Source: Octopus sinensis (lineage: Eukaryota). From it: a DNA stretch of 64,000 nucleotides. Shown piece by piece: positions 12,525 to 54,531 of the stretch. Positions within the stretch are counted from its first letter, which is position 1, and each line of letters opens with the position of its first letter. Where the stretch lies: NCBI RefSeq assembly GCF_006345805.1, contig NC_043000.1, positions 119,040,001 through 119,104,000 of the forward strand, given 5' to 3'. The notes under the pieces were generated by a model. It made no database searches and was not told the DNA's origin. It was given only the letters and a program-made list of their open reading frames with translations. A program made the translations under genes and the position numbers.

Positions 12525-13209
12525 ATATGCCACCTGTTCAACTCCTACCGTTTCTAGGGCAACGAAGAAAACTTTTTTCGAAATCAGTGATATGAGCTTT
12601 TAGCAGGATAAATTTCAGGCAAAGTAACCTAGTTTCAGAGAAAAATCTTCTTTCGAAAGTTATGAAAATAATAATAAAAAAAAGGCTCAGAGAGTCCTTT
12701 TACCAGGCATAACAGGGTTAAAGAATAACTCAAAAACGTAGAAGAGAAGAAGAGATCACTTGAAAATCCAGTGGCTTCAATATCTGCTCGCGCAGATGTG
12801 CTGCAACGGTCATCGTCAGCTTCTGGTATCTTAGTAACGCTTACCCGCATCACGTTCCACTCGTTCGCTCTGACGTCGAAACAAATAATTTGGAGCATAA
12901 CACACACACGAGCTCGATCGAGCCGGCCGGTGGATAGTCGTTTCTTTCCTTCTCGTGCCACATGCCAAAGCTTCGAATGGTACTTCTTACTCTCATGCTA
13001 CAGTGTAAAATTAAACAACTCGTACTGGTTTTATGAACTCAGTATATTTATGTTTAGCGTCTGGTACTATTTTGTGTTCGTGAAGAGCAGTCGTAAGATG
13101 GAGAGATTGTAACATATCAACACACCATTTAAGATATATCTAGAATTCACCTCACATTTATACGTAGACTGCGTCAAAGAAATTTTCTTGTTATATAACT
13201 ATTCGTAAA

Positions 13210-13430
13210 GCGGCGAGCTGGCAGAATCGTTGGCACGCCCAACAGAATGCTTAGCGACATTTCATCCGTCTTTACATTCTGAGTTCAAATTCCGTTGAGG
13301 TCGACTTTACCTTTCATCCTTCCGGGGTCGATAACATAAGTATCAGTTGAACACTGCCGTCATTGTAATAGACTTATCTCCTTCCCCGAGCTTGATGGAC
13401 TTGTACCAAAATTTGAAATCGTTATATTAA
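13210..13430 (+). mobile_element. tRNA-derived SINE family B
   Basis: GGCGAGCTGGCAGAATCGTT A-box-like head, GAGTTCAAATTCC B-box, CCTTTCATCCTTCCGGGGTCGATAA central block. Many copies in the window (20345-20560 -, 22579-22910 +, 28612-28830 -, 41865-42085 +, 45176-45300 +, 49870-50090 -, 56307-56527 +). Confidence 0.88.
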
Positions 13431-13679
13431 TTATTCGTAGTTGTTGCGGCAACATTATACACTAAATACCCTACATTGAATAACCTATACTGCACTTTAC
13501 CAAATGGCTTACAGTATTTTGCTAAGTTTTCAAAGTAACTATTTTTATTCGATCTATTTCTTGCTCTCACAGCATAAAATTAACCTCATTATTTCAATCA
13601 GTTTACATACAAGTTTTGTTCTCTCAGATTCCATTGTTTTATATTTCATTTCGTAGATTACTAAACTTTCAATTTCTCT

Positions 13680-13951
13680 TACTTCTATTCAAGAATATCT
13701 TTTCTTTTACTTGTTTCAATCATTAGACTGCAGCCAAGCTGAGGCATCACTTTCAAGAATTTTAGACGAACGAAATCAACCCCAGCACTTGTCTTTTTAA
13801 AGCTTGGTGCTTATTCTATCGGTCTCTTTGCTGAGCCGCGAAGCACATGAGCACATCAAAACCAGTTGTCAAGCAGTGATGGGGACAAACACAGACAATA
13901 TGTACCCTAATATTTTTACCAGAGATCAATCCTATAGCCACTACACACGCA

Positions 13952-14018
<67 letters not shown>

Positions 14019-14035
14019 TTAATTTTCCGTCTACC
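13680..14035 (-). mobile_element. Diverged SINE family A 3' half
   Basis: Reverse complement of the family A tail and body; mirrored at ~49290-49600. Confidence 0.75.
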
Positions 14036-14859
14036 AAGTAAAAATGTAATGGAAAATTGGTCAGTTTCAAAACATTGATGTTCAGGTCAGAAAAGCAAAG
14101 TTTGAAGGAAATAGTAGTCATTTCCTTTGATTTCTAGATAGAAGCAAATGGGAAATAACGCTGACCAAAAACAAAAGAATATTACTCGGTGTAATTGAAT
14201 CAAAGATCTCTATATTCCAAAAGACTCCCTTCACGTGCCCGAAGAAAAAGCAAATGACGTGCTATCTCGGAGCTAGGAAATAGAGAACATCTGAGGTACA
14301 TCTTGAATAAAAAGGTACATCGAATGGGTTAATTGTTGCAGATATGTAACAATTTATAGCGTTTTGTCATAGAAATCGACAATTCTGAAAACATTCAAAA
14401 TCATTTATAAACCTCGTTTTATTGAAGCGAAGTATATTTACATAATGAACTGTATAAATCTACTAGAAATTCAGTCTTAATTCGTATTTCATCTAATATA
14501 TATAAGATATAAAATATTTTCAAATTTCATGCGAGTTTGTAATAAAAATTAAGCAATTCATAATTTTATAATGGCATATTTTAATAAGATTACTTAGCAA
14601 AGCTTTAAAAATTTTCAATTGATTTCTTAAGAGTGGTAGTAATACATTTCTACGTATTTCTACGTAATTTATTCAGTTAAGCGATAAAATTTCATAAAGG
14701 GAAATAAGAAAATATGTAAAAGATTGATGAAGAGCAAACTATTAAAAAACACCCAAAGAATGGCAAAATTCCGAGAACAATAAGGGACATTTTAAATAGT
14801 TAAATTTTCAATCGAAAAATACCCATCATCTTGTTTATTTCTTCTTCTCAGTTATTTAA

Positions 14860-15806
14860 TTAACATTTCCAATTACTGAATTCAGAAATTTTGTCCAGTG
14901 GAACTGGATTCTGAATCCATTGCAAAGCTTGAGACACAGTCACAATCCATACATCGTTATTGAGGGAAACTTCTTTCAAAAATGTCTGCAATGCAGCTAA
15001 ATTCTTCATAAGCCATGGCATATGCAAAAATATGCCGAAAGGTGCCTTATTTCTTTTGTAATGGCGATTAAAGTTGTATTTCAAGTAACTTATGACATCC
15101 TTTGAGTTTTGAGGAACTCTATTTTCATCAGCCATTGAAAAAGAATCATCTCCTGCTTCATTGTACCAACGTATAAGAGGGACTTCCCAAAATCCTGGAT
15201 ATGTGTTCTTTGGACAGCCTTTAAGTTGACAATATTTATATGTAACCGGGTAATCAAGTGTAAAGGGCCATATTGGTATTTCTGTAGTAGTAGAAAGTGA
15301 ACCTGTTACCATCGAAGTATCGTAGAGAAATTCATTATCTTTCAATGTCTCGTACTGGATCTTATTCCCTAGTGCAAGAAACGGTGAACGATATCCTACA
15401 AGATTTTCTTTTGGAATACTGGCCTTTTCACTAAGCCAGTTTTTCATGCCAACAATTTCACGATAATAATCAATGTAACTAGCACTATACCAGTATGAAA
15501 TTGGGAATTTATGCGTTTGGGTGTGAGTAGCTATTTCATGCTTTAGGTCATATAATTCTTTCACGAGAGCAGCATCAGTCGTTTCGCTGTGGGACACGTA
15601 AAACGTTGCTCCAATAGGACAGCCGTTTGGATTGGTTAGGTTCATGCTAAACAAATTTCTGTAATAAACGAAAGTACGCCGGAGAACTGCGTCGTCAAAA
15701 GTCAATAGAATTATCTGCGGAGTTGAATTTGTTGGAAGGGAGCCTGGAATTTCCGGCCCAGGACATTTACATTTCGGTAGCTTGCAATGTTCTGGTTGAC
15801 AGGGAC
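14860..15806 (-). CDS. Exon 2 of left chitin-deacetylase-like gene: CE4/NodB polysaccharide deacetylase domain (315 aa)
   Basis: Acceptor ttgtag|GT (phase 1, matching exon 1). Intact motifs TFDD, HTQTH, RSPF, YDTS, GIFLH. Stop TAA at 14860-14862; AATAAA at 14668-14673 on the minus strand. Confidence 0.93.
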
Positions 15807-16699
15807 CTACAAAGTAAAAAAACCATAAAATCAAACCAAAAGATGAAAGTTTTTTTTTTTTTAATGGATACGAACACACATCTGCTAACTAACTCTTATA
15901 TGGAATGAGGCCTAGAGCTATTGATCTACAACAATAAAAAAAGAAACAGGAGTTCCAACCATTGATACGGGTGTAAAAATGCAATTATACAAACAATAGG
16001 GGAAATCTGTGGAATCAGAGAAAACTGCGCAAAAAATTCATTTGTCGTGGGGATTTTGGAAGGTTGTTCATCAACAGAGAGCAGAATGATGCAGTTATCT
16101 TGTAAACATAACCATTTATACGATTATTGCTATCGGAGAAAAATAAATAATTATATAACACTATAAAGTAATCATTTCAAAGATCACTGAAATTCTTCGT
16201 GAAAATACATAGATCTGAACGTGTATGTTATGCATAGAAATACACCCGGTGAACGCCGCTGTTAAAGCGACTCCATGGCTTGCTTATCGAGGAATATCAG
16301 TGAACGCAGTTCTTTTCTAATATCGTGGAGAGATTTCCATCAACGTTAACTATACTTCATTTTAGCTGAATGGTTATTAACTAAACTTAAGCTATCTGAC
16401 GCATTTATATCAGTCAATGTATATTACACAGTAATATAATGGTATTTATTTTATCAAACCGGATAGGATGAAAGGCAAAGCAGACCTCGGCAGAATTTGA
16501 ACTCAGAGCATATCAGACAATTTATATTACACAGACCACTTGAGCTGATGTTTGTGAAACACAAAATTTAATTCTCTATTTTATCCCATTATTTGAATGT
16601 TTAAACATCTCCATTGCTAGAGATTACTCTTTTCATTTAATTTGCTGAGAGGCTACAAGTCTATGAGGTCGCAGTTTACGTAGATTTTCAAGTAGTTTA

Positions 16700-17540
16700 G
16701 ACTGAGAACACAACACTGCCCCGCCTAACAAGATGCCAGTCGTTTGCAGAGTTTAGTTCCAGGTGCTATAGGTACTCATTTTGGTTAACAGGCAGCTCCG
16801 TCCAAAAGAATGACGATTAATTGCTGGAGAAATTAAACAAATAAACTACGAGTGATGTCAGTGAAATACCAAGATGAAAGTAATTAACCAAAATAAATTC
16901 TGCTCAACGGAACAGACTGCCCTCAGACTGAGAAGAATTTCGAAAAAGGAACCGAGCAATAATACCGTTTTTGATTGGTGTAACACTATGAGAAATGTTT
17001 GTGAGCAATAAATGGTAACTACGCAGCAACTCGGTGGATTAGATTACTCAGGGTTTCCCTTTATCGTAGATTTAGATGAATCGAAATACATGAATCAGAA
17101 ATATCATTGAGGAAAGTGGGACGATGCGAGTCATTGAGCATTTGACTCAATAGAAAGACGTACAGGCAAAGGCTGTCTATGAAAGCCGATCGTAGGCGGG
17201 AAACACTTTGGTTGATTATAACCTTGTGGTTATTGGTAGAGAAACGTACGATATGCAATGGATGGGCGTCCTATGTTAGTTTAGGTAATATGTATACACA
17301 TGAAGTTGTAAGCCATACTTTTAAATTCGTAAATCAAAACAATGAGAGTATACATGCTCAAACAATCGAAGTGAGATGGGTGCTCGCCAATAAACAAAAA
17401 CAGCCAAGGCGACAATGCAGAATGGGCAGTGCTTTATATACATCGTATCTGCAGGGGTGTTTTTGGAGAAGTATATTCGGAAACCATGAACTGTCATTCA
17501 CGAATCTGATTTCATATGACATGTTTTGCTTATAAAGAAA
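16700..17540 (+). mobile_element. Degenerate Merlin / ISXO2-like (IS1595-family) DDE transposase relic in the intron, antisense to the gene
   Basis: FDWCNTMRNVC (16970-17005), DESKYMNQKYH, then DRRRETL..I...TICNGWASY..L..Y.HEVVSH..KFV....IHAQTIE..W...YLQGCFWR, the Merlin/ISXO2 motif order. Confidence 0.75.
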
Positions 17541-18276
17541 AATTTCTTGCAAACATTGTTTTCAAGTTTAATTTATTTTCTAGTTTAAATCTGTTCTGTA
17601 ATTGCTTCGGTGGCGTTTTTTTTGTTGTTATCTATGCAGAATATTACAGAATATACTTTCATTTTGGGTTTCCGCCCTCGTCACTTCCATTTGTGACAGT
17701 ATTACTCATTTTATCGCCAATTACTCTCATTATTTTATGACTCAAAACTATGTTGATCCTGATTATCAGAGTTTACTGGAGCGACAGGAGATAAAATACC
17801 CTATTCAAAAACCCAACCCGCAACACAGTCCGAGAATTGAGTCCAAAGTCACCTTTTCAGGATGAAATATAGTAGTTAAAATGACTATATCCTATACTAT
17901 ATACAATACCTCTTATCTAAAATAATCTATCAAACTTGTATACAAGATCGTTAACAAGTGGTGAATTACAATTTCGGATATAAACTCATGTTTTACGCCG
18001 TTTAATATTTTAAGAAATGGTCGTTCGTAAGAAGCAACATAAAATCGATAAGTGACTGCTTAGAATAGGAAATATTTTAAGCTTAAAAGATAAGAGAAAG
18101 AACAGCAGTTTTGAATAAATACCAAATTCAGAGTGTTGTAAACTGGATTATATATAACTCTAGTTCGACAATCAGAGATCACTTATTTCTTATTGAGTTA
18201 CTACTGTGGCAAGAGATAAAAATATCACTGAAAGAAGAGATTTGGTACATAAAATTCTTGAAAATATATTACTTAC

Positions 18277-18835
18277 CAGTGAGTTGGGGTTTAGAAGTAG
18301 TGGTTTTTGGCTGATCATCCTGGTTGTGGCACTTGACAGTTTTTGGAAGATTTGAACAGACACAGATGCTAGCTACTGGATTGAAATCTGTTCCTTCAGG
18401 ACAAGTTTTTAATACGCCTGTTTCAAATCCCGTACAAATATAGAACAGGGAATTGTTTGTTTCATGGCACTTATACTCATTGCTTTTTCTACAGCTTTTC
18501 AGAGAATGTAATGGTTTAGAAGTAGGAACACTGTGAGTGGTAACACGGGTGGTTTTTGACTGATCTCTATCTGATTTGCAAAAGTCAACGCCAGAGACTG
18601 GCCAGTCACAGCTCTTCGTTTTTGGATTGAAAATTATATTTTGAGGACAATTGATCAATACTTTTTTACCAAATGCACACTGATAGTATTGGAAATCGTT
18701 TGTTTCATGGCACTTATATTCACCGTTTGAACAGCTTTCCTGAGAATATGATGGAATAATAAATAAGACATGGAGCAAAATTAATGACAGCCAAAATGTG
18801 TGTTGGCGTTTCAGGTAAAAACCTTGAAAGCCCAT
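18277..18835 (-). CDS. Exon 1 of left gene: signal peptide, two CBM14 (peritrophin-A-like) domains, Thr-rich linker (186 aa + 1 nt); spliced product 501 aa
   Basis: ATG at 18835, hydrophobic WLSLILLHVLFIIPSYS, two Cys-rich domains with C-x12-C containing FNP and CDWP, donor ACT G|gtaagt in phase 1. Confidence 0.9.
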
Positions 18836-19069
18836 TTCGATGAACTATTTGTCAATATAAATGTATATATATATATTGATTAAAGTGTTATGCATAAAGT
18901 CTGAAGTTTAGGCTGCGACTAAAATTGCTTGATTTCTTTATTGCTTTTATACACTTTGTAACATAGAACGAACCACAATGACTATTAATGGGGAGGTTAT
19001 GTATAACTTTTTAAAAAATTCTGCCCACCATTCTCTCACATCGTCTATGTAGAGGGACAAGCCTTATTG

Positions 19070-19187
19070 TAAAGAAAGAAAGAAAGAAAGAAAGAAAGAA
19101 CGAAAGAAAGAAAAAAGAAAGGAAGAAAGATCGAAAGGAAGAAAGAAACAAAGAAAAAAGAAAGGAAGACAGAAAGAAAAAATTAAA

Positions 19188-19239
<52 letters not shown>

Positions 19240-19299
19240 GAAGGAAGAAAGAAAGGAAGAAAGAAAATATAATTAAATACAGAAATAAAGAAATAAATA

Positions 19300-19335
<36 letters not shown>
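19070..19335. repeat. (GAAA)n purine tract upstream of the left gene; shorter mirror at 43105-43250
   Basis: Direct inspection. Confidence 0.93.
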
Positions 19336-19517
19336 GAGCAGGCGTTTGACGAGTTTCTTTTTTTTCGGTAACAAGTTTTTGTGAATGTGAGAGTGAATGT
19401 AGAATGCAATGTCATGCTTCACAAGGACGTTTTAATAAGAGAAAACACTTTCTAAATCACGGAGATGTACTTGCATAGCAAGTGACCTGATCTAAGGTCG
19501 TGTGCTAGAATGAAAAC

Positions 19518-19796
19518 AATTGTAGCGTGGAAGGTGTTTATAAGTCATTTAGGAAACACAAAAACAGTAAGATTCACTTCAACATTTAAATTTATTTTGC
19601 CAAAATATTTTCGTCGCTTTGAGACCGCAACCTGATCACTGACAAAATTCCGTACAGCATGGAATTTTGTCAGTGATCAGGTCGCGGTCTGAAAGCGATG
19701 AAGATATTTTGGCAAAATAAATATAAATGTTGAAGTGAATCTAACGGTTTGTGTGTGTTTTTTTAATGGCTTATAAACACCTTCCACGCTGCAATT
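19518..19796. mobile_element. ~280-bp fold-back palindrome from a PLE-type terminus, with a hammerhead-like motif in each arm
   Basis: Arms invert around 19652-19660. Minus strand 19595-19647 reads UUUUGUCA GUGAUCAG GUUGC..GCGAC GAAAAUAUUU UGGCAAAA. Confidence 0.7.
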
Positions 19797-21465
19797 ACTT
19801 TCCACGTTTCCATTCCCTACTTACGCAGCAAATTTTTCCCACCTCAAGGCCACGAATACATATCGGTGGAACTGCGGGCCTTTCAGGCTTTACCAAGAAT
19901 ATTTGTAGAGTAATTTGAGTGCATTACATTCGACTAAAAATAACGATCACAGTATATATTTATTTCTTTCTTCTGCGATTAAAATTCCAAATTCTTTGGG
20001 GTGTTAGACGTGGTCTCTTCCACTTAGTAGACTTTAGTGTAGTTCGCTGTTGCAAGCGTATGGAACAGGTTCGTGACTGGAGATTGTCATAACTTCCCGT
20101 CTATACTTCCCAAGATGTCAAAAACTAACGCTAAATACTCTAGACAATTACCTCCTCCGCTTCTCTAACATCCCTGTATTCCGATCCAACCTCAACGTTG
20201 TACATCACTTCTTAACAGGCTAGCATATCATACATTCTGATCTTCTCAAGGTGCGAATATTTTCGTCTTTATCAATAGATTAGTTTCGAGGTCCAGATTA
20301 GACTCTTTACTCAAAGTTCACTCCAGAAAGTGTTGCCCGAAACTATAGTGATTTCAAATTTTGGCACAAGTCAGCAAACTCCGGTGGAAGGGGTAAGTCG
20401 ATTACATCGATCCCACTGCTCAACTGGTACTCAATTTAGCGACTCCGAAAGGATAACAGGCAGTCAACCTCGGCGGAATTTGAACTCAGATCATAAAGAC
20501 AGACGAAATGTCGCTGAGCATTTTGCCCGGCATGCTAACAATTCTGCCAGCTAGCTGCCTAAAGTTGCCTGTAACTATACTGATTTCATTCATTTACACT
20601 CACATATTCCCTTGGACATCGGCAACAAGGACTTCCACTTAACTGACTCAGACTTTCTTTCTTCGCCCTCCTACAAGGTATATGTTACCTCAAGCACTCT
20701 GTGAACTTAAGCTACCAATTTTCGACTGTATTTCTTCCTGCTTCGAAAGTGTTTATCTCACTTCACATCTATGCACTTGGAGGGTCATCCAACGATTGCT
20801 TTAGCGTAACTAGTCCGCGCATGCTCAGCTATGACTTAGATCTACACCACACCCACCTTCTGCAAACCAATAACATCTCATGTCAGCTAATTGATTATAG
20901 CTCCGTCTCTTTTCATACCAGTTATCCCTGGCAATAAATGTATGTTACTTGTGAGTTATGAGAAATAGCTAGGCATGAGATTGAAAGCAATCCACACGCA
21001 AACATGACCTCAATCCTACAAGTAGTTCCATAATAGATGCCCTGCAACAATTCATGTAAAGAACACAGAACCCAACACCTGGAGAAAAATCGCTAGAACT
21101 ACACGCTGGACCCGGTACTGCAACTCCTGTAAAACCATCTTTGGAACTGCAACGGGTAATTCCGTACCTCGCACCGGTTGAAAGCCTTAGTGAGTCTTAG
21201 ACTTAAAGTGACCCCGTTAGTCACTTACTAAAATTATTTCTACAAACTTTATAGAATCTTTCTTCATGCAACTTTACAATGACGATTGTTCATGAAGCAG
21301 TATACCCGCAGAGGAAATCACCTTCTTTGCTTCGCGTGTATGAAGTATCTCACAACATACACTAGTTAAATCTGGTCGCTTCGAGTGGACAATGTCCATT
21401 CTATTATCCTCAAACAATGCACCATCAGAAAACAGCAATCTCTTTCTGTTATTTACATTCATCGT

Positions 21466-21830
21466 GGAGGCGCAATGACCCAGTGATTAGGGTGGCAAAC
21501 TTACGGGTTCGATTCCCAGACCGGGCGTTGTGAGTATTTATTGAGTGAAAACACCTGAAGCGCCACGAGGCTCCGGCAGCGGGTGGTGGCGAACCCTACT
21601 GTACTCTTTCACAATACCATTCACTCTTTCTTCCCGTTTCTGTTGTACCTGTATTTCAAAGGGCCAGCCTTGTCACACATTGTGTCACGCTGAATCTCCC
21701 CGAGAACTACGTTAAAGGTACACGTGTCTGTGGAGTGCTCAACCACTTGCACGTTAATTTCACGACCAGGCTGTTCCTTTAATCGGATCAACTGGAACCC
21801 TCGTCGCCGTAACCGACGGAGAGCCAAGAA
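21466..21830 (+). mobile_element. tRNA-derived SINE family C; mirror at ~40608-40975 (-)
   Basis: TGACCCAGTGATTAG A-box-like, GGTTCGATTCCC B-box, tail GGAACCCTCGTCGCCGTAACCGACGGAG. Confidence 0.75.
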
Positions 21831-21904
21831 TTATACAGGCATTGGCATATGGCTACATACATATTCAGACGAATATGGGTAAAACATAAATATATACAAA
21901 TGCA

Positions 21905-22556
21905 TACACAGGGGTTGGTCAAAATAATGGAAACACCTAGCATCATAATTTTGAAATATCTATAAAACCGTCAAAAGCTTGTTTATCTTTATGTTTATTT
22001 ATATATTTATTATTAGTGTTGCTTAATGTTTTGCTAAAATTGCTGGGGCTTTTTCAGATATCATCAGAAAAAGATAATTAAAATTCATAAAAATGACCGA
22101 TCTATCGGTCTTTCAAAGAGATCAAATTGTTGGTGCTCGTATGGCAGGCGCTGGCGTAAAGAAAATAGCCGAAATGTTTGGTGAACTGTCTCGAAAGTAA
22201 TCACAGCCTTTGAGAAAGAGAGAAAAACCTCCTCGTTGAAACAAAACTCCGAAAGAAAACCAAAACTTTCAGATAGGGACCGGCGGATTCTTACGCGAAT
22301 TGTTAGGAAGGATCACAAAAGTACAGCTCCCAAAATTATTGCAGAGCTTAAAGACCACCTCGTAAACCCAGTTTTCACAAAATCTCTTCGCCAGGAGATG
22401 CACAAAGCCGGATTTTATGGGAGGGCTGCAATCAGATAACCACTACATTCAAAAAGAAACGTTGCAAAGCGTTTAGAGTAGAATTTAGAGTTATAACATT
22501 GGTTCCTAGAATGATTTTTTCTCGGACAAGTCATCCTTCACCAAATTCCAAGTAAT
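21905..22556 (+). mobile_element. Tc1-family transposon 5' end with decayed transposase N-terminus
   Basis: TA followed by CAGGGGTTGGTCAAAATAATGGAAAC TIR; MTDLSVFQRDQIVGARMAG..., GRKPK-like ERKPKLSDRDRRILTRIVRKD, GFYGRAA. Confidence 0.88.
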
Positions 22557-22944
22557 CTCATTCTCTACCTCTGTCTAAGGTGACGCGCTGGCAGAAACGT
22601 TAGCACGCCGGGTGAAATGCTTACCGGTATTTCGATAAATTAAGTACCAGTTACGCACTGGGGTCGATATAATCGACTTGATCCGTTTGTCTGTCCTTGT
22701 TTCTCCCGTCTGTGTTTAGCCCCTTGTGGGTAGTAAAGAAATAGGTATTTCGTCTGCCGCTACGTTTTGAGTTCAAATTCCGCCGAGGTCGTCTTTGCCT
22801 TTCATCCTTTCGGGATCGATGAATTAAGTACCAGTTGCGTACTCGGGTCGATCTAATCGACTGGCTTCCTCCCCACGAAATTTCGGTCCTTCTGCCTAGA
22901 GTAGAAAAGACTGTCTATCTATTTTCTCTTTCTAATTTTGTTTC

Positions 22945-23402
22945 TTTTGAAATATCTATAAAACCGTCAAAAGCTTGTTTATCTTTATGTTTATTTATAT
23001 ATTTATTATTAGTGTTGCTTAATGTTTTGCTAAAATTGCTGGGTTTTTTTCAGATATCATCAGAAAAAGATAATTAAAATTCATTAAAACGACCGATCTA
23101 TCGGTCTTTCAAAGAGATCAAATTGTTGGTGCTCGTATGGCAGGCGCTGGCGTAACGAAAACAGCCGAAATGTTTGGTGTACTGTCTCGAAAGTAATCAC
23201 AGCCTTTGAGAAAGAGGGAAAAACCTCCTCGTTGAAACAAAACTCCGAAAGAAAACCAAAACTTTCAGATAGGGACCGGCGGATTCTTACGCGAATTGTT
23301 AGAAAGGATCACAAAAGTACAGCTCCCAAAATTATTGCAGAGCTTAAAGACCACCTCGTAAACCCAGTTTCCACAATAACTCTTCGCCAGGAGATGCACA
23401 AA
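22945..23402 (+). mobile_element. Second copy of the same Tc1 fragment (left-arm-only block)
   Basis: Near-identical to 21950-22400. Confidence 0.88.
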
Positions 23403-23944
23403 GACTGTCTATCTATTTTCTCTTTCTAATTTTGTTTCTTTTTCTTTTATTTCTTTTCTTCTTTTCCTTTTTCTTTCTCTCACCACTTGTTATTCTCTGA
23501 GTTTCTTTTCGTTTTCGTTCTCTCGCCTCTGTCTACTAAGGTATTATGTGCGTGTGTGTTTATGCATTTGTATATATTTATGTTTTGCCTATATTTGTCT
23601 GTATATGTATGCAGTCAGGTACCAACGCCTGTATGTTTAGTGTATATAATGTATGTCTATATAGGTTGTTTGGTATGTGCATGTATTGCTAAATGTATAT
23701 GTATTTCAGGATGTTAGTTCTTTGTGAAAGTTTTTTAAACGTTTATATCTTTTAATTGATATAATTGATATAATTTATTTAAATTTATTGTTTTTTTTTG
23801 CCACAAATTACTTACCCTGGGTATTCAGGGCTTCTTCCTTCTACATAATCTTTGATTTAAGGTTTTCTTCGAATATTATAATAATATGATTTTCAACCGC
23901 AATTGTAATTTCATTCAAGCGTTTATTGAAAAGACCGTTAGTTC

Positions 23945-24765
<821 letters not shown>

Positions 24766-24913
24766 CTTTTATGTATTGATTAAGTCTTTTCTTGTTTGGT
24801 TTTAAAATAGGGGTTTTTTGTCTCGAATTATATTATATGATATTTTACTATAAAATTGGATTTAACCCTAAATCTGATTTTTCTCTGTAATTTTGGATTC
24901 ATTCCCTAATATT

Positions 24914-24969
<56 letters not shown>

Positions 24970-26369
24970 GTTTGTATGTGTCTTTCTGACTGTGTTAGTC
25001 TTCCATCACCGTTGAAAACCGTTCCCGCAACTAAGCGGTTCGTCAAAGGATTCCATAAGAATAAGTATTGGGCTTAAGAAATACGTCCTGCCGGTGATTT
25101 TGTCAACTAAATCCCTTCAAGGCGGTGCTCCAGCATGGTCGATCAGTAGGAGAAATGACTTTTTGACGTTTCGAACATAGTTCTTTGTCGGAAAGGAGAA
25201 AGAGAAAAGCCCAAAGAAGTAGAAAGAAATCGCCAACAGCACGTGTGTAGTTACATATACATCACCGTCTTTATGTCCCGGAATATATCACCATATCACC
25301 TTCTTCAGAAATATGCTACAGTAAGTTTCATTCCTAAGAACAACCCCTCTCACCATACCAACTATCGTTTTATCACGCTCTCAGCATCTGAGAGGTGATG
25401 TAGCCAGCCGCGCCCAACACATTAAATGTCTCCCCCTCTGCCATTACCCTCAGTACGACTTTTGCGAGGCAAGGTCAACTGGAGGCTAACTCTCGTACGT
25501 CATTCATTATTGGTTCTCATCCCGGAGAAATTTAATATGAACAGAGATGTTACATTCAACATCAGTAAATCACTTGAACCTGTTTGAAATTCGAAACTCA
25601 GGGGGAAACTGCCCCCCTATGGATCCTAACTGTGTCTTGCATCACTATCTTCTTGTCAGATCACACTGGTTCGTTGTGTTCAGAGATAACTCTCACTCTC
25701 GCCTTCTGTCCGTCTGTCTGTCTCTGGTTCTCTCTCTCTCTCAACTTTGATCATCCTTAAGGTTCAGTTTTAACTCACAGACCCTTAAACAATCCCCCAG
25801 CAACGCCCGCACTTCCCTTCTTTTGAGATGATGGATGACTATTTGAATGAGAGATTTAGGTGTTCTTTCTAGTCGGTCAGTTAGTAAAGTGGAAGCTCTC
25901 TCGCTTACTCGTTCACCACTAGCAACCTTTTCTCCTGTCCATTTATTACAGTGAGCCAGGACGATTGAATATTAAAATATTAAGTGAAAATGCGACTTTT
26001 TCCAGAATTTGGATTTTTTATACGGCAAGCATACCGTCCAGATCTCTAATTTGAGTATAACGGATGTCCTTCCATGTCCCTAACAATCCCGGAGGCCTTG
26101 CAGAGAAGCCGTTCTTTGGTGTATACATATACAGGTCAGCTATTACAGACGAAAGAAATGGGAAGTATACATTAAGCGTAGAGAGGAGGGAGAGAAAAAG
26201 AAAACGAAAGAGAAACAGAAACGGGAAACTAGGGAGAGAAGAGAGAAAAGGAAGAAGTTGCTAGCTCGTATGAAGTTGGAAAAGGAAAAAACACTTAAGA
26301 AAAGACAGTTCACTAAATGTGTGTAACGAACGCACACATAAAATAAAATTACACATACACACACACACA

Positions 26370-26422
<53 letters not shown>

Positions 26423-26989
26423 TTAAGTATATATTTGCATACAAATCCACATATATGATTATGTATGTAAATAATGAAAAATATGTACGCAAATACGTGC
26501 TCACATAAATATAAGTATATACACTATACGTATACATCCATGTACGTATGTACATAAATATAAATATAAACATACACATATACTTAAACACATACACAGA
26601 CGCACACATACACATACATAATCACACCCACAATACACACATACGCAATTGTATATATACAAACAATTTATTAAAGCTACTCAATGGATATAGTACTAAA
26701 ACTACAAATTTACAAAATGCAGCACCATATATAGAAATATCCATGAATTAAATGTAACAATTAAATGGGTTTCTAAAATGCAATGAAATAAAATACAATA
26801 ATAAAATTATAAAAACAAGAAGAATGAACCCCGGTAAATTTTCAGCTTTTCTTAATTTTTTTTTAAAGAATACGTCGAGATATACATTCGCTATCATTGC
26901 GATGCGAAATAACCATACATTACAAATACAAATTCAAAGGTGGCATTCGAAGCTTATTCAAATGTCAACATATATTATTCATATGGAAT

Positions 26990-27715
26990 TTTGTCAGTTG
27001 ATATTTTAAATTTTGTTGCCTACCTACAGGAATTTAAGAGTTTGCGTCTTTTATTAAGAGCGCTATTATCCATACACACACAAGCGCATACTCAGTACAG
27101 AGAGGCATAAATTGCATTTCATGGGCCTTTTATGAGCTCCATGTCTGTAAGCTGATGCTTTATCTGAGATTTTCCATGTTACATTGAAAGGACAAGTTTC
27201 ATTTTCTTTCAGTTCAAAGACATATTTCGCCAAACTAGTCTTTGTCCTATTTTCGGGGTAGCGGCAGGAATTTCAGTGGGAACAAAATCGGGTCTTGAAA
27301 GATTTTTCTGAAGTCCCTGTGTATGTTTTATATTCTTGTGAGCTTTCTATTTGTATTTTGGCCCTATACACAATACCTTTCTCCAGACATTTTCCTTCCA
27401 ACGGACAGGAGGTCTCATCTTTACAATTACAAATCTTCAGATTTGAACCGGCACTCTAGCTATCTGTAATTATTTTAGTGTTGTGTTGGCTAATGCAAGA
27501 GGCGAAGTTTTTACAACAAGAATAGTAATCTTCAGCGTTCTTCTATTAAATATTCTCTAAAATTTATGGCTAAGTAGAAAATGCCTAGAAACTAATTTTA
27601 AGAATTCTCAACCTATATTAGATTTTACGGCCATATTAAATGCTGGGTTGAACCACAAAACCTTTCTAGTTCTAGTTCTACGTGTGGTATTATTGCTAGC
27701 ATTAACTTGGGTGTA
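26990..27715 (-). mobile_element. Penelope-like element (Poseidon-type) C-terminus with GIY-YIG, decayed; mirror of 38030-38760
   Basis: Reverse complement of 38030-38760. Confidence 0.82.
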
Positions 27716-28844
27716 CTGGATCTTCTCAGAGAATCTACTATTCCTTCATGCATTGTTGTAATAGGTTGCAGTATTTTGAAATGCTGTCCCATTCAAAGAA
27801 ATTGATGATATTCGCCTACCTACCTATATATATATATATATATATTTTTAAATTCTTAAAAATATATTTTTCTGTCTATATATATGTACTACGAAACAAA
27901 CATGATTTTTATTGGAATCCTAATAGTTTTTGTTGAATACTTTCTTCAATACTTTCTTTAAACTGTTTTTAATATTTTTTTTAATTTTTATCAAAGAACG
28001 TATATATGTATTTCAGTATATTTGTGACAACCAGCACTCACCACAAAAAAGCTTATACAAAGCTTATATTTTACTTTTAACAATATTTTTCTAAAAAAGG
28101 AAACCGATCAAGTGAATAAACTTCTTTAGAATTGCATTTTCAAATCTTCTTTTATATATAGCAATGTGGAATAAACAGGAATTTTTTTTGTTTCTGGGCT
28201 AGTATGTCATGGTTCAGTGGTTTTTCGGACTGGTCATAGAGTTCAGAATGGTGTGAGTGTGTATGTGTGTCTCTGTGCACGACTTTATGTGTATGTGTAT
28301 GTGCTTGTGTCTGTGTTCATGGGCCGTTTTTAATTGGTCCCAGAGTTTTGTGTGGAGTATGTATGGCTTTGTGTACATTTATCAGGATGGTTTGTGAATA
28401 TGTGTGCACGTTTGTGTGTGTGTATATGTGTGAACGCGAAATAAAAGACTCCAAGAACTAAAGGCAATTCCTCTCAAGAGACATTACCCAGCATATATAC
28501 ACACATATGTACACACACAAACTCAGTCGTTCCCCAGTAAAAATCACACACATACACTCAAAGGAAAGAATCACACACATACACACACACATATATATAT
28601 ATATTTCTTTACTACCCACAAGGGGCTATACACAGAAGGGACAAACAAGAACAGACAAACGGATTAAGTCGATTATATCGATCCCAGTGCGTAACAGGTA
28701 CTTATTTAATCGACCCCGAAAGGATGAAAGGCAAAATCGACCTCGGCGGAAATTGAACTCAGAACGTAGCAGCAGACGAAATACTGCTAAGCATTTCGCC
28801 CGTCGTGCTAACGATTCTGCCAGCTCGCCGCATACACATATATT

Positions 28845-36369: not shown

Positions 36370-37089
36370 GTTTTTTTATGTGGGGGACGTTTTTTTATTG
36401 GTACCAGAGTTGAGTGTGGTGTATGAATACCTCTGCGTATATTTAACAGGATGGTGTGTGTATATGTGTGTGATTTGTATTCGTCAGGGTGTTGTGTGTG
36501 CGTATGTGTATGTATATGTTTGTTCGCAGATGTGTATGTCTGCGTTTGTGTGTGTGAGTGTGTATGTTTGTGTGTGCTTTGTGTTGGTGGGGAAGTTATG
36601 TGTGTACGTGAGTGTGTATATGTGTGTATCTGAGTATGTTTGTGTTTTAATTGTCCTGACGTTGTGTGTGAGCAACCGTATGTGTTTGTGACGGTGCACA
36701 TATATGTGTGTGTTGGTGTGTTGTATTTATCAGGAGTTCTCTGTGTGTCCGTGTATGTTGTGTTATCCGGGTGGTGGGTATGTGTGTGCCTGTACGTTAT
36801 ATGCATGTTGGTACTGAGTATGCGTTTGTGTGTGTGTGTGTGCATATATGTGGGTGTGGTTTATGTAGTTTCCGGGTGTGTGTGCACATGGGTGTTTGTG
36901 TATTGTGTGAGTGTTTTGTGTCGTTTGTATTGTTTGTGTAGTGTGTGTGTATACGTGTGAGTATGTCTATGTGTCTTGTATTTGTCAGGGTGGTGTGTAT
37001 CATTGTGTGCGTGTACATGTTGGTGTGTATGTGTGTGTATGTCTGTGTGTTTGTTAGTGTTTGTTGGACTTGTATAGCTTGCATATATG
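36370..37089. repeat. Degenerate (TG)n-rich low-complexity tract
   Basis: Direct inspection. Confidence 0.85.
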
Positions 37090-38029
37090 TGTATGTGAGA
37101 TTTTTTACTTTGAGTGTATGTGTGATTTTTTACTGGGGAACGATTGAGTTTGTGTGTGTGTACATATGTGTGTATATATGCTGGGTAATGTCTTTCGAGA
37201 GGAATTGCCTTTAGTTCTTGGAGTCTTTTATTTCGCGTTCACACATATACACACACACGAACGTGCATACATATTCACACACCATCCTGATAAATGTACA
37301 CAAAGCCATACATACTCCACACTAAACTCTGGGACCAATTAAAAACGGCCCACGAACACAGACACAAGCACATACACACAAACAGAAACATACACATAAA
37401 GTCGTGCACAGAGACACACACACAAACTCACACCATTCTGAACTCTATGAACAGTCCGAAAAACCACTGAACCATGACATACTAGCCCAGAAACAAAAAA
37501 GAATTCCTTTTCATTCCACATTGCTATATATGAAAGAAGATTTGAAAATGCAATTCTAAAGAAGTTTATTCACTTGATCGGTTTTCCTTTTAAAGGAAAG
37601 TATTGTTAAAAGTAAAATATAAGCTTTGTATAAGCTTTTTTGTGCTGAGTGCTGGTTGTCACAAATATATTGAAATACATATATACGTGCTTTGATAAAA
37701 ATAATAAAAAAATATTAAAAACAGTTTAAAGAAAGTATTGATTGATTGATTCTAGTTTCAGCTCATGAGCTGGGGGCACCGTCATTTGAAGAAAGTATTC
37801 AACAAAAACTATTAGGATTCCAATAAAAATCATGTTTGTTTCGTAGTACATATATATAGACAGAAAAATATATTTTTAAGAATTTAAAAAAATATATATA
37901 TATATATAGGTAGGTAGGCGAATATCATCAATTTCTTTGAATGGGACAGCATTTCAAAATACTGCAACCTATTACAACAATGCATGAAGGAATAGTGGAT
38001 TCTCTGAGAAGATCCAGTACACCCAAGTT

Positions 38030-38760
38030 AATGCTAGCAATAATACCACACGTAGAACTAGAACTAGAAAGGTTTTGTGGTTCAACCCAGCATTTAATAT
38101 GGCCGTAAAATCTAATATAGGTTGAGAATTCTTAAAATTAGTTTCTAGGCATTTTCTACTTAGCCATAAATTTTAGAGAATATTTAATAGAAGAACGCTG
38201 AAGATTACTATTCTTGTTGTAAAAACTTCGCCTCTTGCATTAGCCAACACAACACTAAAATAATTACAGATAGCTAGAGTGCCGGTTCAAATCTGAAGAT
38301 TTGTAATTGTAAAGATGAGACCTCCTGTCCGTTGGAAGGAAAATGTCTGGAAAAAGGGATTGTGTATAGGGCCAAAACACAAATAGAAAGCTCACAAGAA
38401 TATAAAACATACACAAGGACTTCAGAAAATTCTTTCAAGACCCGATTTTGTTCCCACAGAAATTCCTGCCGCTACCCCGAAAATAGGACAAAGACTAGTT
38501 TGGCGAAACATGTCTGAGAATTGAAAGAAAATGAAACCTGTCCTTTCAATGTTACATGGAAAATCTCAGATAAAGCATCAGCTTACAGACATGGAGTTCA
38601 TAAAAGACCCATCAAATGCAATTTATGCCTCTCTGTACTGAGTATGCGCTTGTGTGTGTATGGATATTAGCGCTTTGAATCAAAGACGCGAACTCTTAAA
38701 TTCCTGTAGGCAGGCAACAAAATTTAAAATGTCAACCGACAAAATACCATATGAATAATA
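38030..38760 (+). mobile_element. Penelope-like element (Poseidon-type) C-terminus with GIY-YIG, decayed
   Basis: RKVLWFNPAFNMAVKSNIG*EFLKLVSRHF..HKF*RIFNRRTLK, GKCLEKGIVYRA..YKTY..SENSFKTRF..H, TSLAKHV*ELKE..VTWKI, KCNLCL, LNQRRELLNSCR. Confidence 0.85.
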
Positions 38761-39338
38761 TATGTTGACATTTGAATAAGCTTCGAATGCCACCTTTGAA
38801 TTTGTATTTGTAATGTATGGTTATTTTGCATCGCAATGATATCGAATGTATATTTCGAAGTATTCTTTAAGAAAACCTTCGACTGTCTTACATATCATTT
38901 TCAAGCTGAAAATTTACCGGGGTTCATTTTTCTTGCTTTTATCATTTTATTATTGTATTTTATTTCATTGCATTTTAGAAACCCATTTAATTGTTACATT
39001 TAATTCATGGATATTTCTATATATGGTGCTGCATTTTGTAAATTTGTAGTTTTAATATTATATCCTTTGAGTAGCTTTAATAAATTGTTTGTATATATAC
39101 GTTATGATCTAGATGTTTTTATGCGTATGTGTGTATTGTGGGTGTGATTATGTATGTGTATGTGTGCGTCTGTGTATTTGTTTAAGTATATGTGTATGTT
39201 TATATTTATATTTATGTACATGGATGTATACGTATGGTGTATATACTTATATTTGTGTGAGCACGTATTTGCGTACATATTTTTCATTATTTACATACAT
39301 AATCATATATGTGGATTTGTATGCAAATATATACTTAA

Positions 39339-39403
<65 letters not shown>

Positions 39404-39879
39404 TATATGTCTGTGTGTGTGTGTGTGTGTGTAATTTTATTTTATGTGTGCGTTCGTTACACACATTTAGTGAACTGTCTTTTCTTAAGTGTTTTTTCTT
39501 TTTCCAACTTCATACGAGCTAGCAACCTCTTCTTTTTCTCTCTTCTCTCCCTAGTTTCCCGTTTCTGTTTCTCTTTCGTTTTCTTTTTCTCTCCCTCCTC
39601 TCTACGCTTAATGTATACTTCCCATTTCTTTCGTCTGTAATAGCTGACCTGTATATGTATACACCAAAGAACGGCTTCTCTGCAAGGCCTCCGGGATTGT
39701 TAGGGACATGGAAGGATATCCGTTATACTCAAATTAGAGATCTGGACGGTATGCTTGCCGTATAAAAAATCCAAATTCTGGAAAAAGTCACATTTTCACT
39801 TAATATTTTAATATTCAATCGTCCTGGCTCACTATAATAAATGGACAGGAGAAAAGGTTGTTAGTGGTGAACGAGTAAG

Positions 39880-40529
39880 ATTACTTGGAATTTGGTAAAG
39901 GATGAGTTGTCCGAGAAAAAAATCATTCTAGGGACCAGTGCTATAGGCCTTACCTCCACTCTAAACGCTTTGCAACGTTTCTTTTTGAATGTAGTGGTTA
40001 TCTGATTGCAGCCCTCCCATAAAATCCGGCTTTATGCATCTCCTGGTGAAGTGTTTTTGTGGAAACTGGGTTTACGAGGTGGTCTTTAAGCTCTGCAATA
40101 ATTTTGGGTGCTGTACTTTTGTGATCCTTCCTAACAATTCGCGTAAGAATCCGCCGGTCCCTATCTGAAAGTTTTGGTTTTCTTTCGAAGCTTTGTTTCA
40201 ACGAGGAGGTTTTTCCCTCTTTCTCAAAGGCTGTGATTACTTTCGAGACAGTACACCAAACATTTCGGCTGTTTTCGTTACGCCAGCGCCTGCCATACGA
40301 GCACCAACAATTTGATCTCTTTGAAAGACCGATAGATCGGTCATTTTAATGAATTTTAATTATCTTTTTCTGATGATATCTGAAAAAACCCCAGCAATTT
40401 TAGCAAAACATTAAGCAACACTAATAATAAATATATAAATAAACATAAAGATAAACAAGCTTTTGACGGTTTTATAGATATTTCAAAATTATGATGCTAG
40501 GTGTTTCCATTATTTTGACCAACCCCTGT
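39880..40529 (-). mobile_element. Tc1 5' fragment, mirror of 21905-22556
   Basis: Reverse complement match; ORF KQSFERKPKLSDRDRRILTRIVRKD. Confidence 0.88.
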
Positions 40530-43218: not shown

Positions 43219-43250
<32 letters not shown>

Positions 43251-49311: not shown

Positions 49312-49354
<43 letters not shown>

Positions 49355-50989: not shown

Positions 50990-51071
<82 letters not shown>

Positions 51072-54460: not shown

Positions 54461-54531
54461 TGTATGTAATTTTCTAGATGGTGTAATTTAATTGTTCCTT
54501 TTGAATTGATAAAAGGTGGGTTTTTTCCTAA

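What the first reader, a model, noticed from the sequence alone, without database searches (positions are those of the whole stretch)
18277..18510. Chitin-binding exon differs almost only by amino-acid-changing substitutions
Seen (manual codon comparison of the last 77 codons of exon 1, left vs 43836-44064): 11 codons change the amino acid (e.g. TCC/TAC, GTA/GCA twice, GTC/GCC, GTC/TTC) and only one is purely synonymous (GAG/GAA). That is 13 differing nucleotides in ~230, against roughly 1% in the adjacent intron sample. The signal peptide is 34/35 identical, while CBM14 domain 1 is only about half identical, with indels. Inference: diversifying selection on ligand-binding domains and/or patchy conversion from other paralogs.
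Basis: partly seen in the sequence, partly recalled or inferred. Interest (0 to 1): 0.75.

Follow-up and report, generated by a model that had tools for sequence, protein, structure and literature searches.

The report
Octopus chitin deacetylase duplicates, mosaic divergence
The flagged stretch is the second chitin-binding domain of one of two head-to-head copies of an octopus chitin deacetylase gene; the amino-acid-changing differences are really there, but in these 77 codons they fit neutral change on an older piece of sequence in a copy-swapping gene cluster, and do not prove selection.

Summary
The adjacent intron differs at 1.3-1.6%, the signal peptide is 34/35 identical, and domain 1 is 52% identical with indels.

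The window is Octopus sinensis CM016862.1:119,040,001-119,104,000. The two copies, L (minus strand) and R (plus strand), are two-exon secreted chitin deacetylases. Exon 1 carries a signal peptide and two CBM14 domains; exon 2 is the CE4 catalytic domain. They lie in inverted duplications about 97.5% identical.

For the flagged domain 2, omega is about 1.6-1.7 and does not differ from 1 (p 0.43-0.48). Neutral mutation alone gives 11 or more of 13 nonsynonymous changes with p = 0.30. The transition:transversion ratio equals the noncoding background.

A third paralogue and the O. vulgaris orthologue polarise the 13 differences. Seven are an older L-versus-(R, third copy) split, four are R-only, and both synonymous changes are recent and private to L.

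The real anomaly is domain 1: 25% divergence in blocks, rich in transversions, with omega about 2.6 across five copies (p = 0.008). The cluster is a mosaic, and R's exon 2 comes from another paralogue.

Verdict: partly supported, moderate-to-low interest.

The parts
18277..18510 (-). Flagged stretch: second CBM14 (peritrophin-A) chitin-binding domain plus the short Thr/Ser/Pro tail at the 3' end of exon 1 of the left gene copy (L)
   Evidence: Translation and codon table. Pfam CBM_14 scores 25.7 bits against a cut-off of 22.1.
18277..18835 (-). Exon 1 of L: signal peptide (about 18737-18835), CBM14 domain 1 (about 18548-18736), linker, CBM14 domain 2. It ends in phase 1 at a GT donor.
   Evidence: From 'ESC...' onward it is identical to RefSeq XP_029635419.2.
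15807..18276 (-). Single intron of L
   Evidence: The donor GTAAGT after 18277 and the acceptor ...TTTGTAG before 15806 restore the Gly codon (G|GT).
14860..15806 (-). Exon 2 of L: CE4/NodB chitin deacetylase catalytic domain (L-type), stop included
   Evidence: Pfam Polysacc_deac_1 scores 24.0 bits. The TFDD, HTQTH, RSPF and FLH motifs are readable in the translation.
43491..44064 (+). Exon 1 of the right gene copy (R): signal peptide, CBM14 domain 1, CBM14 domain 2 (43836-44064 is the counterpart of the flagged stretch)
45935..46887 (+). Exon 2 of R: CE4 catalytic domain of a different, older paralogue type
   Evidence: It is 84% identical in nucleotides to L exon 2, with dS 0.21 and dN 0.21. 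It is 94% identical in protein, and its 3.1-kb surrounding module 96.3% identical in nucleotides, to the exon-2 module of another O. sinensis cluster gene (L004). Pfam scores 37.4 bits.
44973..48077 (+). Module in the right arm (3' intron, exon 2, downstream DNA, satellite) that has no arm-level counterpart on the left. It makes R a chimera.
   Evidence: L004 42294-45385 matches it at 96.3%, whereas the left arm matches at only 84-87%.
48072..49209 (+). Remnant of the true arm counterpart of L exon 2. The acceptor and the first 8 codons are fused to the last 2 codons and the stop ('PCQPEHCKC*'), after a 908-bp deletion.
   Evidence: It is 96-97.7% identical to L 16458-15782 and 14873-14401. 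Junction sequence.
9701..28585 (.). Left arm of the inverted segmental duplication
   Evidence: Self-BLAST. Collinear at 97-99% with O. vulgaris OX597817.1 (L002).
37088..53488 (.). Right arm of the inverted segmental duplication
   Evidence: Self-BLAST. Its distal end and the flank beyond it are collinear with O. vulgaris L001 at 97.4%.

Best explanation
The flagged stretch is the second CBM14 chitin-binding domain of L. L is one of at least three young copies (L, R, and a third copy called V4 here) of an octopus-specific, two-exon, secreted chitin deacetylase ('CDA7-like'). The copies lie in inverted and direct segmental duplications on Octopus sinensis chromosome CM016862.1.

The L/R differences in the stretch are ordinary point substitutions with the same transition:transversion ratio as the noncoding background. 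They sit at the decaying edge of an older L-versus-(R,V4) block whose core is domain 1. The surrounding DNA (signal peptide, promoter, intron) has a younger common history.

Such patchwork genealogies are what non-allelic gene conversion and recombination among cluster copies produce. They are seen elsewhere in the same genes.

Within the block, amino-acid changes accumulate at about the neutral rate or somewhat faster. The subfamily has lost most of the purifying selection seen in the single-copy-type orthologue (omega about 0.45). So 'almost only nonsynonymous' is the expected look of 13 nearly unconstrained substitutions.

Shown here: the gene structure, the counts, the polarisation of the differences, the mosaic, and the omega values.

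Inferred: that gene conversion is the mechanism, and that relaxed constraint rather than adaptation explains domain 2.
For: Counts and gene structure.

Neutrality is not rejected for domain 2:
- NG86 omega 1.56, p = 0.43.
- ML omega 1.71, LRT p = 0.48.
- The neutral nonsynonymous fraction is 0.74, giving P(>=11/13) = 0.30.
- Transitions:transversions are 7:6 against 65:48 in noncoding DNA, p = 1.0.

Polarisation with V4 (O. vulgaris L001) and the O. vulgaris orthologue of L (L002):
- 7 differences are shared by R and V4, 4 are R-only, and 2 are private to O. sinensis L. Both private ones are synonymous.
- Only the L|(R,V4) site class is enriched in domain 2: 9/235 against 16/2182 in noncoding DNA, p = 3e-4. 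The R-only and V4-only classes are not enriched.
- The same site class is 35/225 in the adjacent domain 1.

Mosaic history:
- Exon-1 and exon-2 trees disagree.
- Three mutually incompatible partitions occur within exon 1.
- V4 domain 1 combines R-type and Ov3-type blocks.
- R carries a foreign exon-2 module and a deleted remnant of its own.

Relaxed constraint:
- The L orthologue pair (O. sinensis against O. vulgaris) has exon-2 omega about 1.5.
- The O. vulgaris copy has a premature TAG in domain 2.
- The baseline omega is 0.41-0.50 in the 1:1 O. sinensis/O. bimaculoides orthologue, where dS (0.15) matches the intron divergence.
Against: - All 11 L/R differences that predate the sinensis/vulgaris split are nonsynonymous (P = 0.036 under neutrality at kappa 2.6). 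They contrast with the recent changes on L (Fisher p = 0.033). This leans towards omega > 1.
- Nonsynonymous divergence in domain 2 (about 6%) exceeds the intron divergence (1.6%, p = 0.0014).
- Domain 1 shows omega about 2.4-3.6 in every comparison among young copies, and N 62: S 8 (p = 0.008) in a tree-free count. All six cysteines are kept (P = 0.012 if unconstrained).
- Codons that keep their amino acid carry no synonymous differences in domain 1. That is not what a wholesale import from an old paralogue predicts.
- No donor for the L-specific block was found in about 240 kb of cluster sequence or among 1.8 billion protein representatives.
Confidence: 0.55

Rival explanations
1. Diversifying (positive) selection on the chitin-binding surfaces. 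After duplication the CBM14 domains of L, R and V4 were driven apart by selection for different ligand preferences (chitin or chitosan of different acetylation, or foreign chitin). Domain 2 is a milder case of what is seen in domain 1.
For: - Domain 1 omega is 2.4-3.6 among young copies, against 0.49 for the CBM14 of the 1:1 orthologue.
- The tree-free count gives N 62: S 8, p = 0.008, and p = 0.03 without L.
- The cysteine scaffold and open reading frame are kept despite 25% divergence (joint P = 0.0017).
- Conserved codons in domain 1 have zero synonymous differences.
- In domain 2, 11 of 11 old differences are nonsynonymous (P = 0.036).
- Nonsynonymous divergence in domain 2 exceeds the intron divergence (p = 0.0014).
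- Chitin deacetylase is among the 20 most abundant haemocyte transcripts in cuttlefish (PMC7551771), so an immune role is conceivable.
Against: - No test on the flagged 77 codons rejects omega = 1.
- Many replacements are conservative: V/A three times, I/L twice.
- The catalytic exon shows the same omega of about 1, so the effect is not specific to the ligand-binding domains.
- Since the species split, L has evolved at about the neutral rate and carries a stop codon in O. vulgaris.
- Domain-1 differences come in blocks, are rich in transversions (16:42 against 65:48, p = 2e-4) and are often 2-3 bases per codon. This violates the independent-point-mutation assumption behind omega tests. From general knowledge, both conversion and multi-nucleotide changes inflate such tests.
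Confidence: 0.25
2. Decay of a redundant copy. L (or R) is on its way to becoming a pseudogene, and the differences are unconstrained drift without any function.
For: - Omega is about 1 in exon 2 and about 1.5 between the L orthologues of the two species.
- The O. vulgaris L orthologue has a premature stop.
- R is not annotated in either species.
- L's CE4 Pfam score (24.0 bits) is barely above the cut-off.
Against: - Both copies keep open frames. P(no stop) = 0.0005 for 170 unconstrained substitutions in exon 2.
- All CBM14 cysteines are kept (P = 0.012 in domain 1).
- All CE4 motifs, both splice sites and the signal peptide are intact.
- The L-type exon 2 has stayed open over dS of about 0.2.
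Confidence: 0.12
3. Assembly artefact. The two 'arms' are two haplotypes of one locus joined head to head, so L and R are alleles.
For: The arm divergence (2.5% with indels) is in the range of heterozygosity reported for marine molluscs (general knowledge). Palindromic joins are a known long-read artefact.
Against: - An independent assembly of the sister species O. vulgaris has the left arm next to the same 69-bp array (L002, 97-99%). It also has the distal right arm with its unique flank (L001 1-8194 matches window 51839-60090).
- The arms differ structurally. The right arm has a 3.1-kb foreign module and a 908-bp deletion.
- The L orthologues of the two species are 99% identical, while L and R are about 97.5% identical. 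So the duplication predates the species split.
Confidence: 0.03

Closest known systems
Arthropod-type chitin deacetylases with one CBM14 domain and a CE4 domain (the insect groups containing CDA6-9, after which the RefSeq name 'chitin deacetylase 7-like' is given)
   Same: Secreted, with an N-terminal peritrophin-A (CBM14) domain followed by a CE4/NodB catalytic domain carrying the TFDD, H[ST]xxH, RxPF and LxH motifs.
   Different: L and R have two CBM14 domains. The second is found only in L, R and V4 among the copies sampled. The whole gene is two exons. It belongs to an octopod-specific cluster with head-to-head copies. Function in cephalopods is untested.
Ampliconic or palindromic gene families with arm-to-arm gene conversion (for example mammalian sex-chromosome palindromes)
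   Same: Inverted segmental duplications carry a gene pair near the inner ends. Identity along the arms is patchy, and there is evidence of sequence exchange among copies.
   Different: The arms are only about 97.5% identical, not above 99.9%. The coding exons are more divergent than the flanks instead of being homogenised. One arm carries a module from a different paralogue.
Islands of divergence in duplicated genes that exchange sequence by conversion (theory of selection against homogenisation; examples in MHC, opsin and RH gene pairs; from general knowledge)
   Same: A sharp peak of divergence (25% in domain 1) decays into the neighbouring domain 2 (5.7%) and then into flanks at 1-3%.
   Different: Here it has not been shown that selection maintains the peak. 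An imported tract from an unsampled donor would look the same.
Cysteine-scaffold secreted proteins with hypervariable loops (for example toxin-like or immune effector families)
   Same: Cysteines and a few scaffold codons are identical down to the third base, while the loops between them differ at 2-3 bases per codon.
   Different: The significance is modest. The domain is an enzyme-tethering carbohydrate-binding module, not a stand-alone effector. The catalytic exon is as fast-evolving as the binding domains.

Membership tests
CBM14 (peritrophin-A chitin-binding domain) | Match to Pfam PF01607 above the gathering score | tested here: met
   Whole exon 1 scores 45.9 bits for L and 31.5 bits for R, against a cut-off of 22.1, with two stretches each. 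Domain 2 alone scores 25.7 bits for L (above the cut-off) and 21.5 bits for R (just below).
CBM14 (peritrophin-A chitin-binding domain) | Six-cysteine scaffold with conserved spacing and aromatic residues | tested here: met
   All cysteines of both domains are conserved in L, R, V4 and the O. vulgaris orthologue. The closest solved relatives are CBM14 domains of chitinases, tachycitin and chitotriosidase.
CBM14 (peritrophin-A chitin-binding domain) | Binds chitin | not testable with these tools
   Needs recombinant protein and pull-down or ITC assays.
CE4 / NodB chitin deacetylase | Match to Pfam PF01522 and the catalytic motifs (TFDD, H[ST]xxH, RxP[YF], LxH) | tested here: met
   L scores 24.0 bits and R 37.4 bits, against a cut-off of 23.1. 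The motifs are present in both translations. The best database relatives are annotated chitin deacetylases of octopuses, other molluscs and arthropods.
CE4 / NodB chitin deacetylase | Deacetylase activity on chitin | not testable with these tools
   Needs an enzyme assay.
Genes under diversifying selection | dN/dS significantly above 1 in the flagged domain 2 | tested here: not met
   Omega is 1.56-1.71, with p = 0.43 and p = 0.48. Three paralogues give N 16: S 3, p = 0.23. P(>=11/13) = 0.30.
Genes under diversifying selection | dN/dS significantly above 1 in domain 1 | tested here: inconclusive
   The tree-free count gives N 62: S 8, p = 0.008. The pairwise LRT gives p = 0.11. The substitutions are blocky and transversion-rich, so they are not independent.
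Paralogues exchanging sequence by gene conversion or non-allelic recombination | Different segments support incompatible genealogies | tested here: met
   Exon-1 tree ((R,V4,Ov3,Os4a),L) disagrees with exon-2 tree ((L,V4),(R,Os4c)). Partitions LR|rest, LRV|rest and RV|rest co-occur within about 250 nt, with 118 four-gamete-incompatible site pairs. R is a chimera. A PHI-type permutation did not show spatial clustering (p = 0.97).
Paralogues exchanging sequence by gene conversion or non-allelic recombination | An identifiable donor for the divergent L block | tested here: not met
   No 13-mer of the L- or R-specific blocks occurs elsewhere in the window or in the 5 loci searched (L001-L004, L006). 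No close protein relative of L domain 1 was found (best hit <=48% identity). Only part of the cluster could be sampled.
Palindromes homogenised by arm-to-arm conversion | Inverted arms with near-identity (>99%) | tested here: not met
   Inverted arms are present, but 113 of 4507 aligned noncoding sites differ (2.5%). That is more than the 1% between the orthologous arms of the two species.

The most novel reading that the evidence does not exclude
A young, octopod-specific subfamily of secreted chitin deacetylases is diversifying its chitin-binding modules under positive selection. It gained a second CBM14 domain, turned over the loops of the first, and lost a disulfide in the catalytic domain. 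Gene conversion shuffles the variants among copies. By analogy with the very high chitin deacetylase expression in cuttlefish haemocytes, the likely setting would be recognition or modification of foreign (fungal or parasite) chitin. That would be a chitin-directed innate immune gene family in cephalopods.
Probability: 0.15. Interest if true: 0.55.

Novelty: new member of a known kind. Interest (0 to 1): 0.33.

Why it matters
Seen in isolation, '11 replacements against 1 silent change' looks like strong adaptive evolution. Here, more copies and proper null models show that it is what near-neutral change gives.

The locus is still a good small natural example of how segmental duplication, exon-module swapping and patchy conversion build a lineage-specific enzyme family in a cephalopod genome. 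No paper on the octopus chitin deacetylase cluster turned up in the literature searches.

If the domain-1 signal holds up, it would point to functional diversification of chitin recognition in octopuses. That could be tested with simple binding assays.

There are also practical points for annotation. The RefSeq model of L lacks its signal peptide, R is unannotated, and the O. vulgaris model of L is spliced around a stop codon.

Tried and rejected
1. Protein search with R exon 1 alone found nothing because of the word index. The full-length query worked.
2. An exhaustive HMMER search with L exon 1 against 1.8 billion representatives returned only distant multi-CBM14 proteins (<=48% identity) and no donor for L's domain 1.
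3. Exact look-ups of the two exon-1 ORFs in public assemblies, in the hope of population samples, found nothing on record. The P0002 look-up also failed.
4. I tested whether L's domain 1 was overwritten by domain 2 (intragenic conversion). It was not: L states match domain 2 at 17/46 sites and R states at 18/46.
5. I considered compensated frameshifts as the source of the divergent blocks and rejected the idea. The nucleotide alignment stays in register and identity does not improve with shifts.
6. A k-mer search for donors of the L- and R-specific blocks in the window and the 5 fetched loci searched found none.
7. A PHI-type permutation test for recombination in exon 1 was not significant (p = 0.97), although four-gamete incompatibilities are plentiful.
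8. I rejected a haplotype mis-assembly on the evidence of the independent O. vulgaris assembly and the structural differences between the arms.
9. I did not run structure prediction. The tool returns no coordinates, so surface or binding-face mapping of the variable residues could not be done.
10. Literature searches found no study of cephalopod chitin deacetylase evolution.

Full report
**1. What and where**

The window is identical (100% over 25,346 bases) to Octopus sinensis assembly GCA_006345805.1, chromosome CM016862.1. That places it at 119,040,001-119,104,000.

It contains a large inverted segmental duplication. The left arm is about 9.7-28.6 kb and the right arm about 37.1-53.5 kb. 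An 8.5-kb spacer lies between them.

Each arm carries one copy of a two-exon gene, and the two copies face away from the spacer.
- Exon 1 is L 18835->18277 (minus strand) and R 43491->44064 (plus strand). It encodes a signal-peptide-like N-terminus, two CBM14 (peritrophin-A) chitin-binding domains and short Thr/Ser/Pro linkers. It ends in phase 1 at a GT donor.
- Exon 2 is L 15806->14860 and R 45935->46887. It starts after a polypyrimidine-AG acceptor that restores a Gly codon. It encodes a CE4/NodB chitin deacetylase domain with all catalytic motifs.

The nearest database proteins are 'chitin deacetylase 7-like' proteins of O. vulgaris, O. sinensis and O. bimaculoides. From 'ESC...' onward, L is RefSeq XP_029635419.2. 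R is not annotated.

**2. The observation**

- In the last 76-77 codons of exon 1 there are 11 amino-acid-changing codons and one purely synonymous codon.
- 13 of 229 bases differ (5.7%).
- The first 230 bases of the intron differ at 1.3%, and the whole alignable intron at 1.6% (15/922).
- The signal peptide is 34/35 identical.
- Domain 1 is 52% identical (33/64 aligned codons), with indels of one, one and three codons.

**3. Is the replacement:silent ratio unusual? No.**

- Nei-Gojobori gives dN 0.068, dS 0.044, omega 1.56, Fisher p = 0.43.
- A pairwise maximum-likelihood codon model (F3x4, estimated kappa 2.6) gives omega 1.71 and an LRT against omega = 1 of p = 0.48.
- With this codon composition and kappa, 74% of random substitutions change the amino acid. 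So 11 or more of 13 is expected 30% of the time.
- The transition:transversion ratio in the stretch (7:6) equals that of the noncoding arms (65:48).
- Several replacements are conservative: V/A three times and I/L twice.

**4. Is the exon more diverged than its surroundings? Yes, but modestly for domain 2.**

- 13/229 exceeds the intron (p = 0.0012) and all 4507 aligned noncoding sites of this arm segment (2.5%, p = 0.007).
- The arms are themselves patchy. 5.5% of noncoding 229-base windows reach 13 differences.
- The outstanding feature is the neighbouring domain 1 plus linker, with 58/231 differences (25%). It lies between a signal peptide with 1/99 differences and domain 2.

**5. More copies polarise the differences**

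Public assemblies gave the following comparison sequences:
- The O. vulgaris orthologue of the left arm (L002), 99.0% identical over 12 kb.
- A third two-CBM14 paralogue, V4 (O. vulgaris P0004, locus L001). By collinearity it lies just beyond the right end of the window.
- Single-CBM14 copies from O. vulgaris (L003) and O. sinensis (L004).
- The O. bimaculoides gene (L006).

The 13 flagged differences divide as follows:
- Seven are shared by R and V4 against both L orthologues. All are replacements.
- Four are R-only. All are replacements.
- Two are private to O. sinensis L. Both are synonymous.

Only the L|(R,V4) site class is enriched in domain 2: 9/235 against 16/2182 in noncoding DNA (p = 3e-4). 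The R-only and V4-only classes are at background level. The same class makes up 35/225 sites in domain 1.

So the excess in domain 2 is the tail of one older L-versus-(R,V4) block centred on domain 1. It is not ongoing independent divergence of each copy.

The 11 old differences are all replacements (P = 0.036 under neutrality; contrast with the recent changes p = 0.033). This leans towards omega above 1, but it rests on very few sites.

**6. The cluster is a mosaic**

- Trees disagree between exons. In exon 1 domain 1, R, V4, Ov3 and Os4a are close (dS <= 0.08) and L is the outlier (dS 0.13). In exon 2, L and V4 are close (dS 0.07) and R groups with a different gene, Os4c (dS 0.01). L-R dS there is 0.21.
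- The window segment 44973-48077 (3' intron, exon 2, downstream DNA and a satellite) is 96.3% identical to the exon-2 module of the L004 gene. It is only 84-87% identical to the left arm.
- The true arm counterpart of L's exon 2 survives at 48072-49209. It has a 908-base deletion that leaves 'PCQPEHCKC*'. R is therefore a chimera.
- Within 250 bases of exon 1, three mutually incompatible groupings each have several supporting sites.
- V4's domain 1 combines R-type and Ov3-type blocks.

**7. Domain 1**

- Its differences come in blocks separated by perfectly identical runs of 26 and 24 bases. A permutation test gave p < 5e-5.
- They are rich in transversions: 16:42 against 65:48 in noncoding DNA (p = 2e-4).
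- They are often two or three bases per codon.
- Synonymous divergence is 0.137, about five times the noncoding level of 0.025. That argues for older or imported sequence.
- Nonsynonymous divergence is higher still (0.33).
- Codons that keep their amino acid carry no silent change.
- All six cysteines are kept (P = 0.012 if unconstrained).
- Omega is 2.4-3.6 in all comparisons among young copies. It is 0.7-0.8 against the old paralogue Os4b and 0.49 in the 1:1 orthologue.
- A tree-free minimum-mutation count over five copies gives 62 replacements to 8 silent changes (omega about 2.6, p = 0.008), and p = 0.03 without L. The pairwise LRT is not significant (p = 0.11).
- No donor for the L-specific block was found.

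I therefore cannot separate rapid adaptive turnover of the loops from short templated replacements. The non-independence of the changes weakens any omega test.

**8. Constraint in the family**

- The single-copy-type gene compared between O. sinensis and O. bimaculoides behaves normally. Its dS (0.15) matches the intron divergence (13-14%), and omega is 0.41-0.50 in both the CBM14 and the catalytic domain.
- The young copies have omega of about 1 in the catalytic exon: L-R 0.97-1.03, L-V4 1.2, R-Os4c 2.6.
- The L orthologues of the two species have an exon-2 omega of about 1.5, against an overall arm divergence of 1%.
- The O. vulgaris L orthologue has a CAG->TAG stop near the end of domain 2.
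- Yet the copies are not simply decaying. The chance of keeping exon 2 open through 170 unconstrained substitutions is 0.0005, and the motifs, splice sites and cysteines are intact.

**9. Conclusion**

Patchy exchange among paralogues, and an older origin of the variable block, are supported. Diversifying selection is not demonstrated for the flagged domain 2. There the pattern is what about 13 weakly constrained point substitutions look like. Selection remains a reasonable but unproven hypothesis for domain 1.

An assembly artefact is unlikely. The independent O. vulgaris assembly shows both arms, and the arms differ structurally.

No published description of this cluster was found. The only functional hint is very high chitin deacetylase expression in cuttlefish haemocytes (PMC7551771).

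Noticed in passing
window 29620-31429: A 69-bp tandem array of 26.3 copies (91% matches) in the spacer reads as an open frame of 23-residue repeats. It matches Pfam STPRs (PF21107) at 41.7 bits against a cut-off of 27. STPRs is a 23-residue repeat family that I recall (not checked here) as DNA-binding. The same array borders the left arm in O. vulgaris, where it lies under an annotated 1875-residue product.
   Followed up: partly
window 48072-49209: An exon-2-less remnant in the right arm. The acceptor and first 8 codons are fused in frame to the last two codons and the stop ('PCQPEHCKC*'). This is a 908-bp deletion with its end points just inside the exon.
   Followed up: yes
L002 about 13070 (O. 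vulgaris OX597817.1, orthologue of window about 18320): The O. vulgaris orthologue of L has a CAG->TAG stop in 'CHNQDD' at the end of domain 2. The annotated protein (CAI9720959.1) avoids it by splicing an upstream exon to the AG of the stop codon, so the model lacks both CBM14 domains.
   Followed up: partly
window 18737-18835 and about 20205; 43491-46887: RefSeq XP_029635419.2 replaces the signal-peptide part of L's exon 1 with an upstream exon. It uses the CAG acceptor exactly at the signal-peptide/mature junction, giving a product without a signal peptide. The intact R gene has no annotated protein in O. sinensis or O. vulgaris.
   Followed up: partly
window 15100-15140 (L exon 2) vs 46600-46640 (R exon 2): The L-type catalytic exon has lost both cysteines of 'GSACSMADSC' (it reads 'GDDSFSMADEN'). 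These are kept in R, in Os4c and in O. bimaculoides. This looks like a coordinated loss of a probable disulfide.
   Followed up: no
window 31644-33387: Helitron remains in the spacer. The ORF at 32570-32938 matches Helitron_like_N (95 bits). The neighbouring ORFs have no Pfam match.
   Followed up: partly
window 994-2109, 4075-4605, 53627-54433, 61768-62622: Retroelement debris: an RVT_1 reverse transcriptase fragment (76 bits) and ORFs with GIY-YIG endonuclease domains, which is compatible with Penelope-like elements.
   Followed up: partly
window 1-975, 2369-3136, 8463-8902, 47094-47660: AT-rich satellite arrays of the TATATACA type that produce long spurious 'YIYIYVC' ORFs. One of them sits between R's exon-2 module and the remnant.
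   Followed up: no
L006 1-1330 (O. bimaculoides CM046604.1): O. bimaculoides also has a head-to-head exon-1 copy about 9 kb upstream of its CDA7 gene, interrupted by an assembly gap. It shares 'TG.ETG.L.TC' with domain 2 of L and R, so the divergent arrangement and the domain-2-like sequence may be old.
   Followed up: no
window 18700-18721 and 18460-18481 (and R counterparts): A block of about 20 nucleotides (TATAAGTGCCATGAAACA and neighbours), plus TTCAATCCA, is identical between domain 1 and domain 2. The two domains are otherwise only about 47% identical in protein. This suggests either a recent internal duplication or exchange between the two domains.
   Followed up: partly
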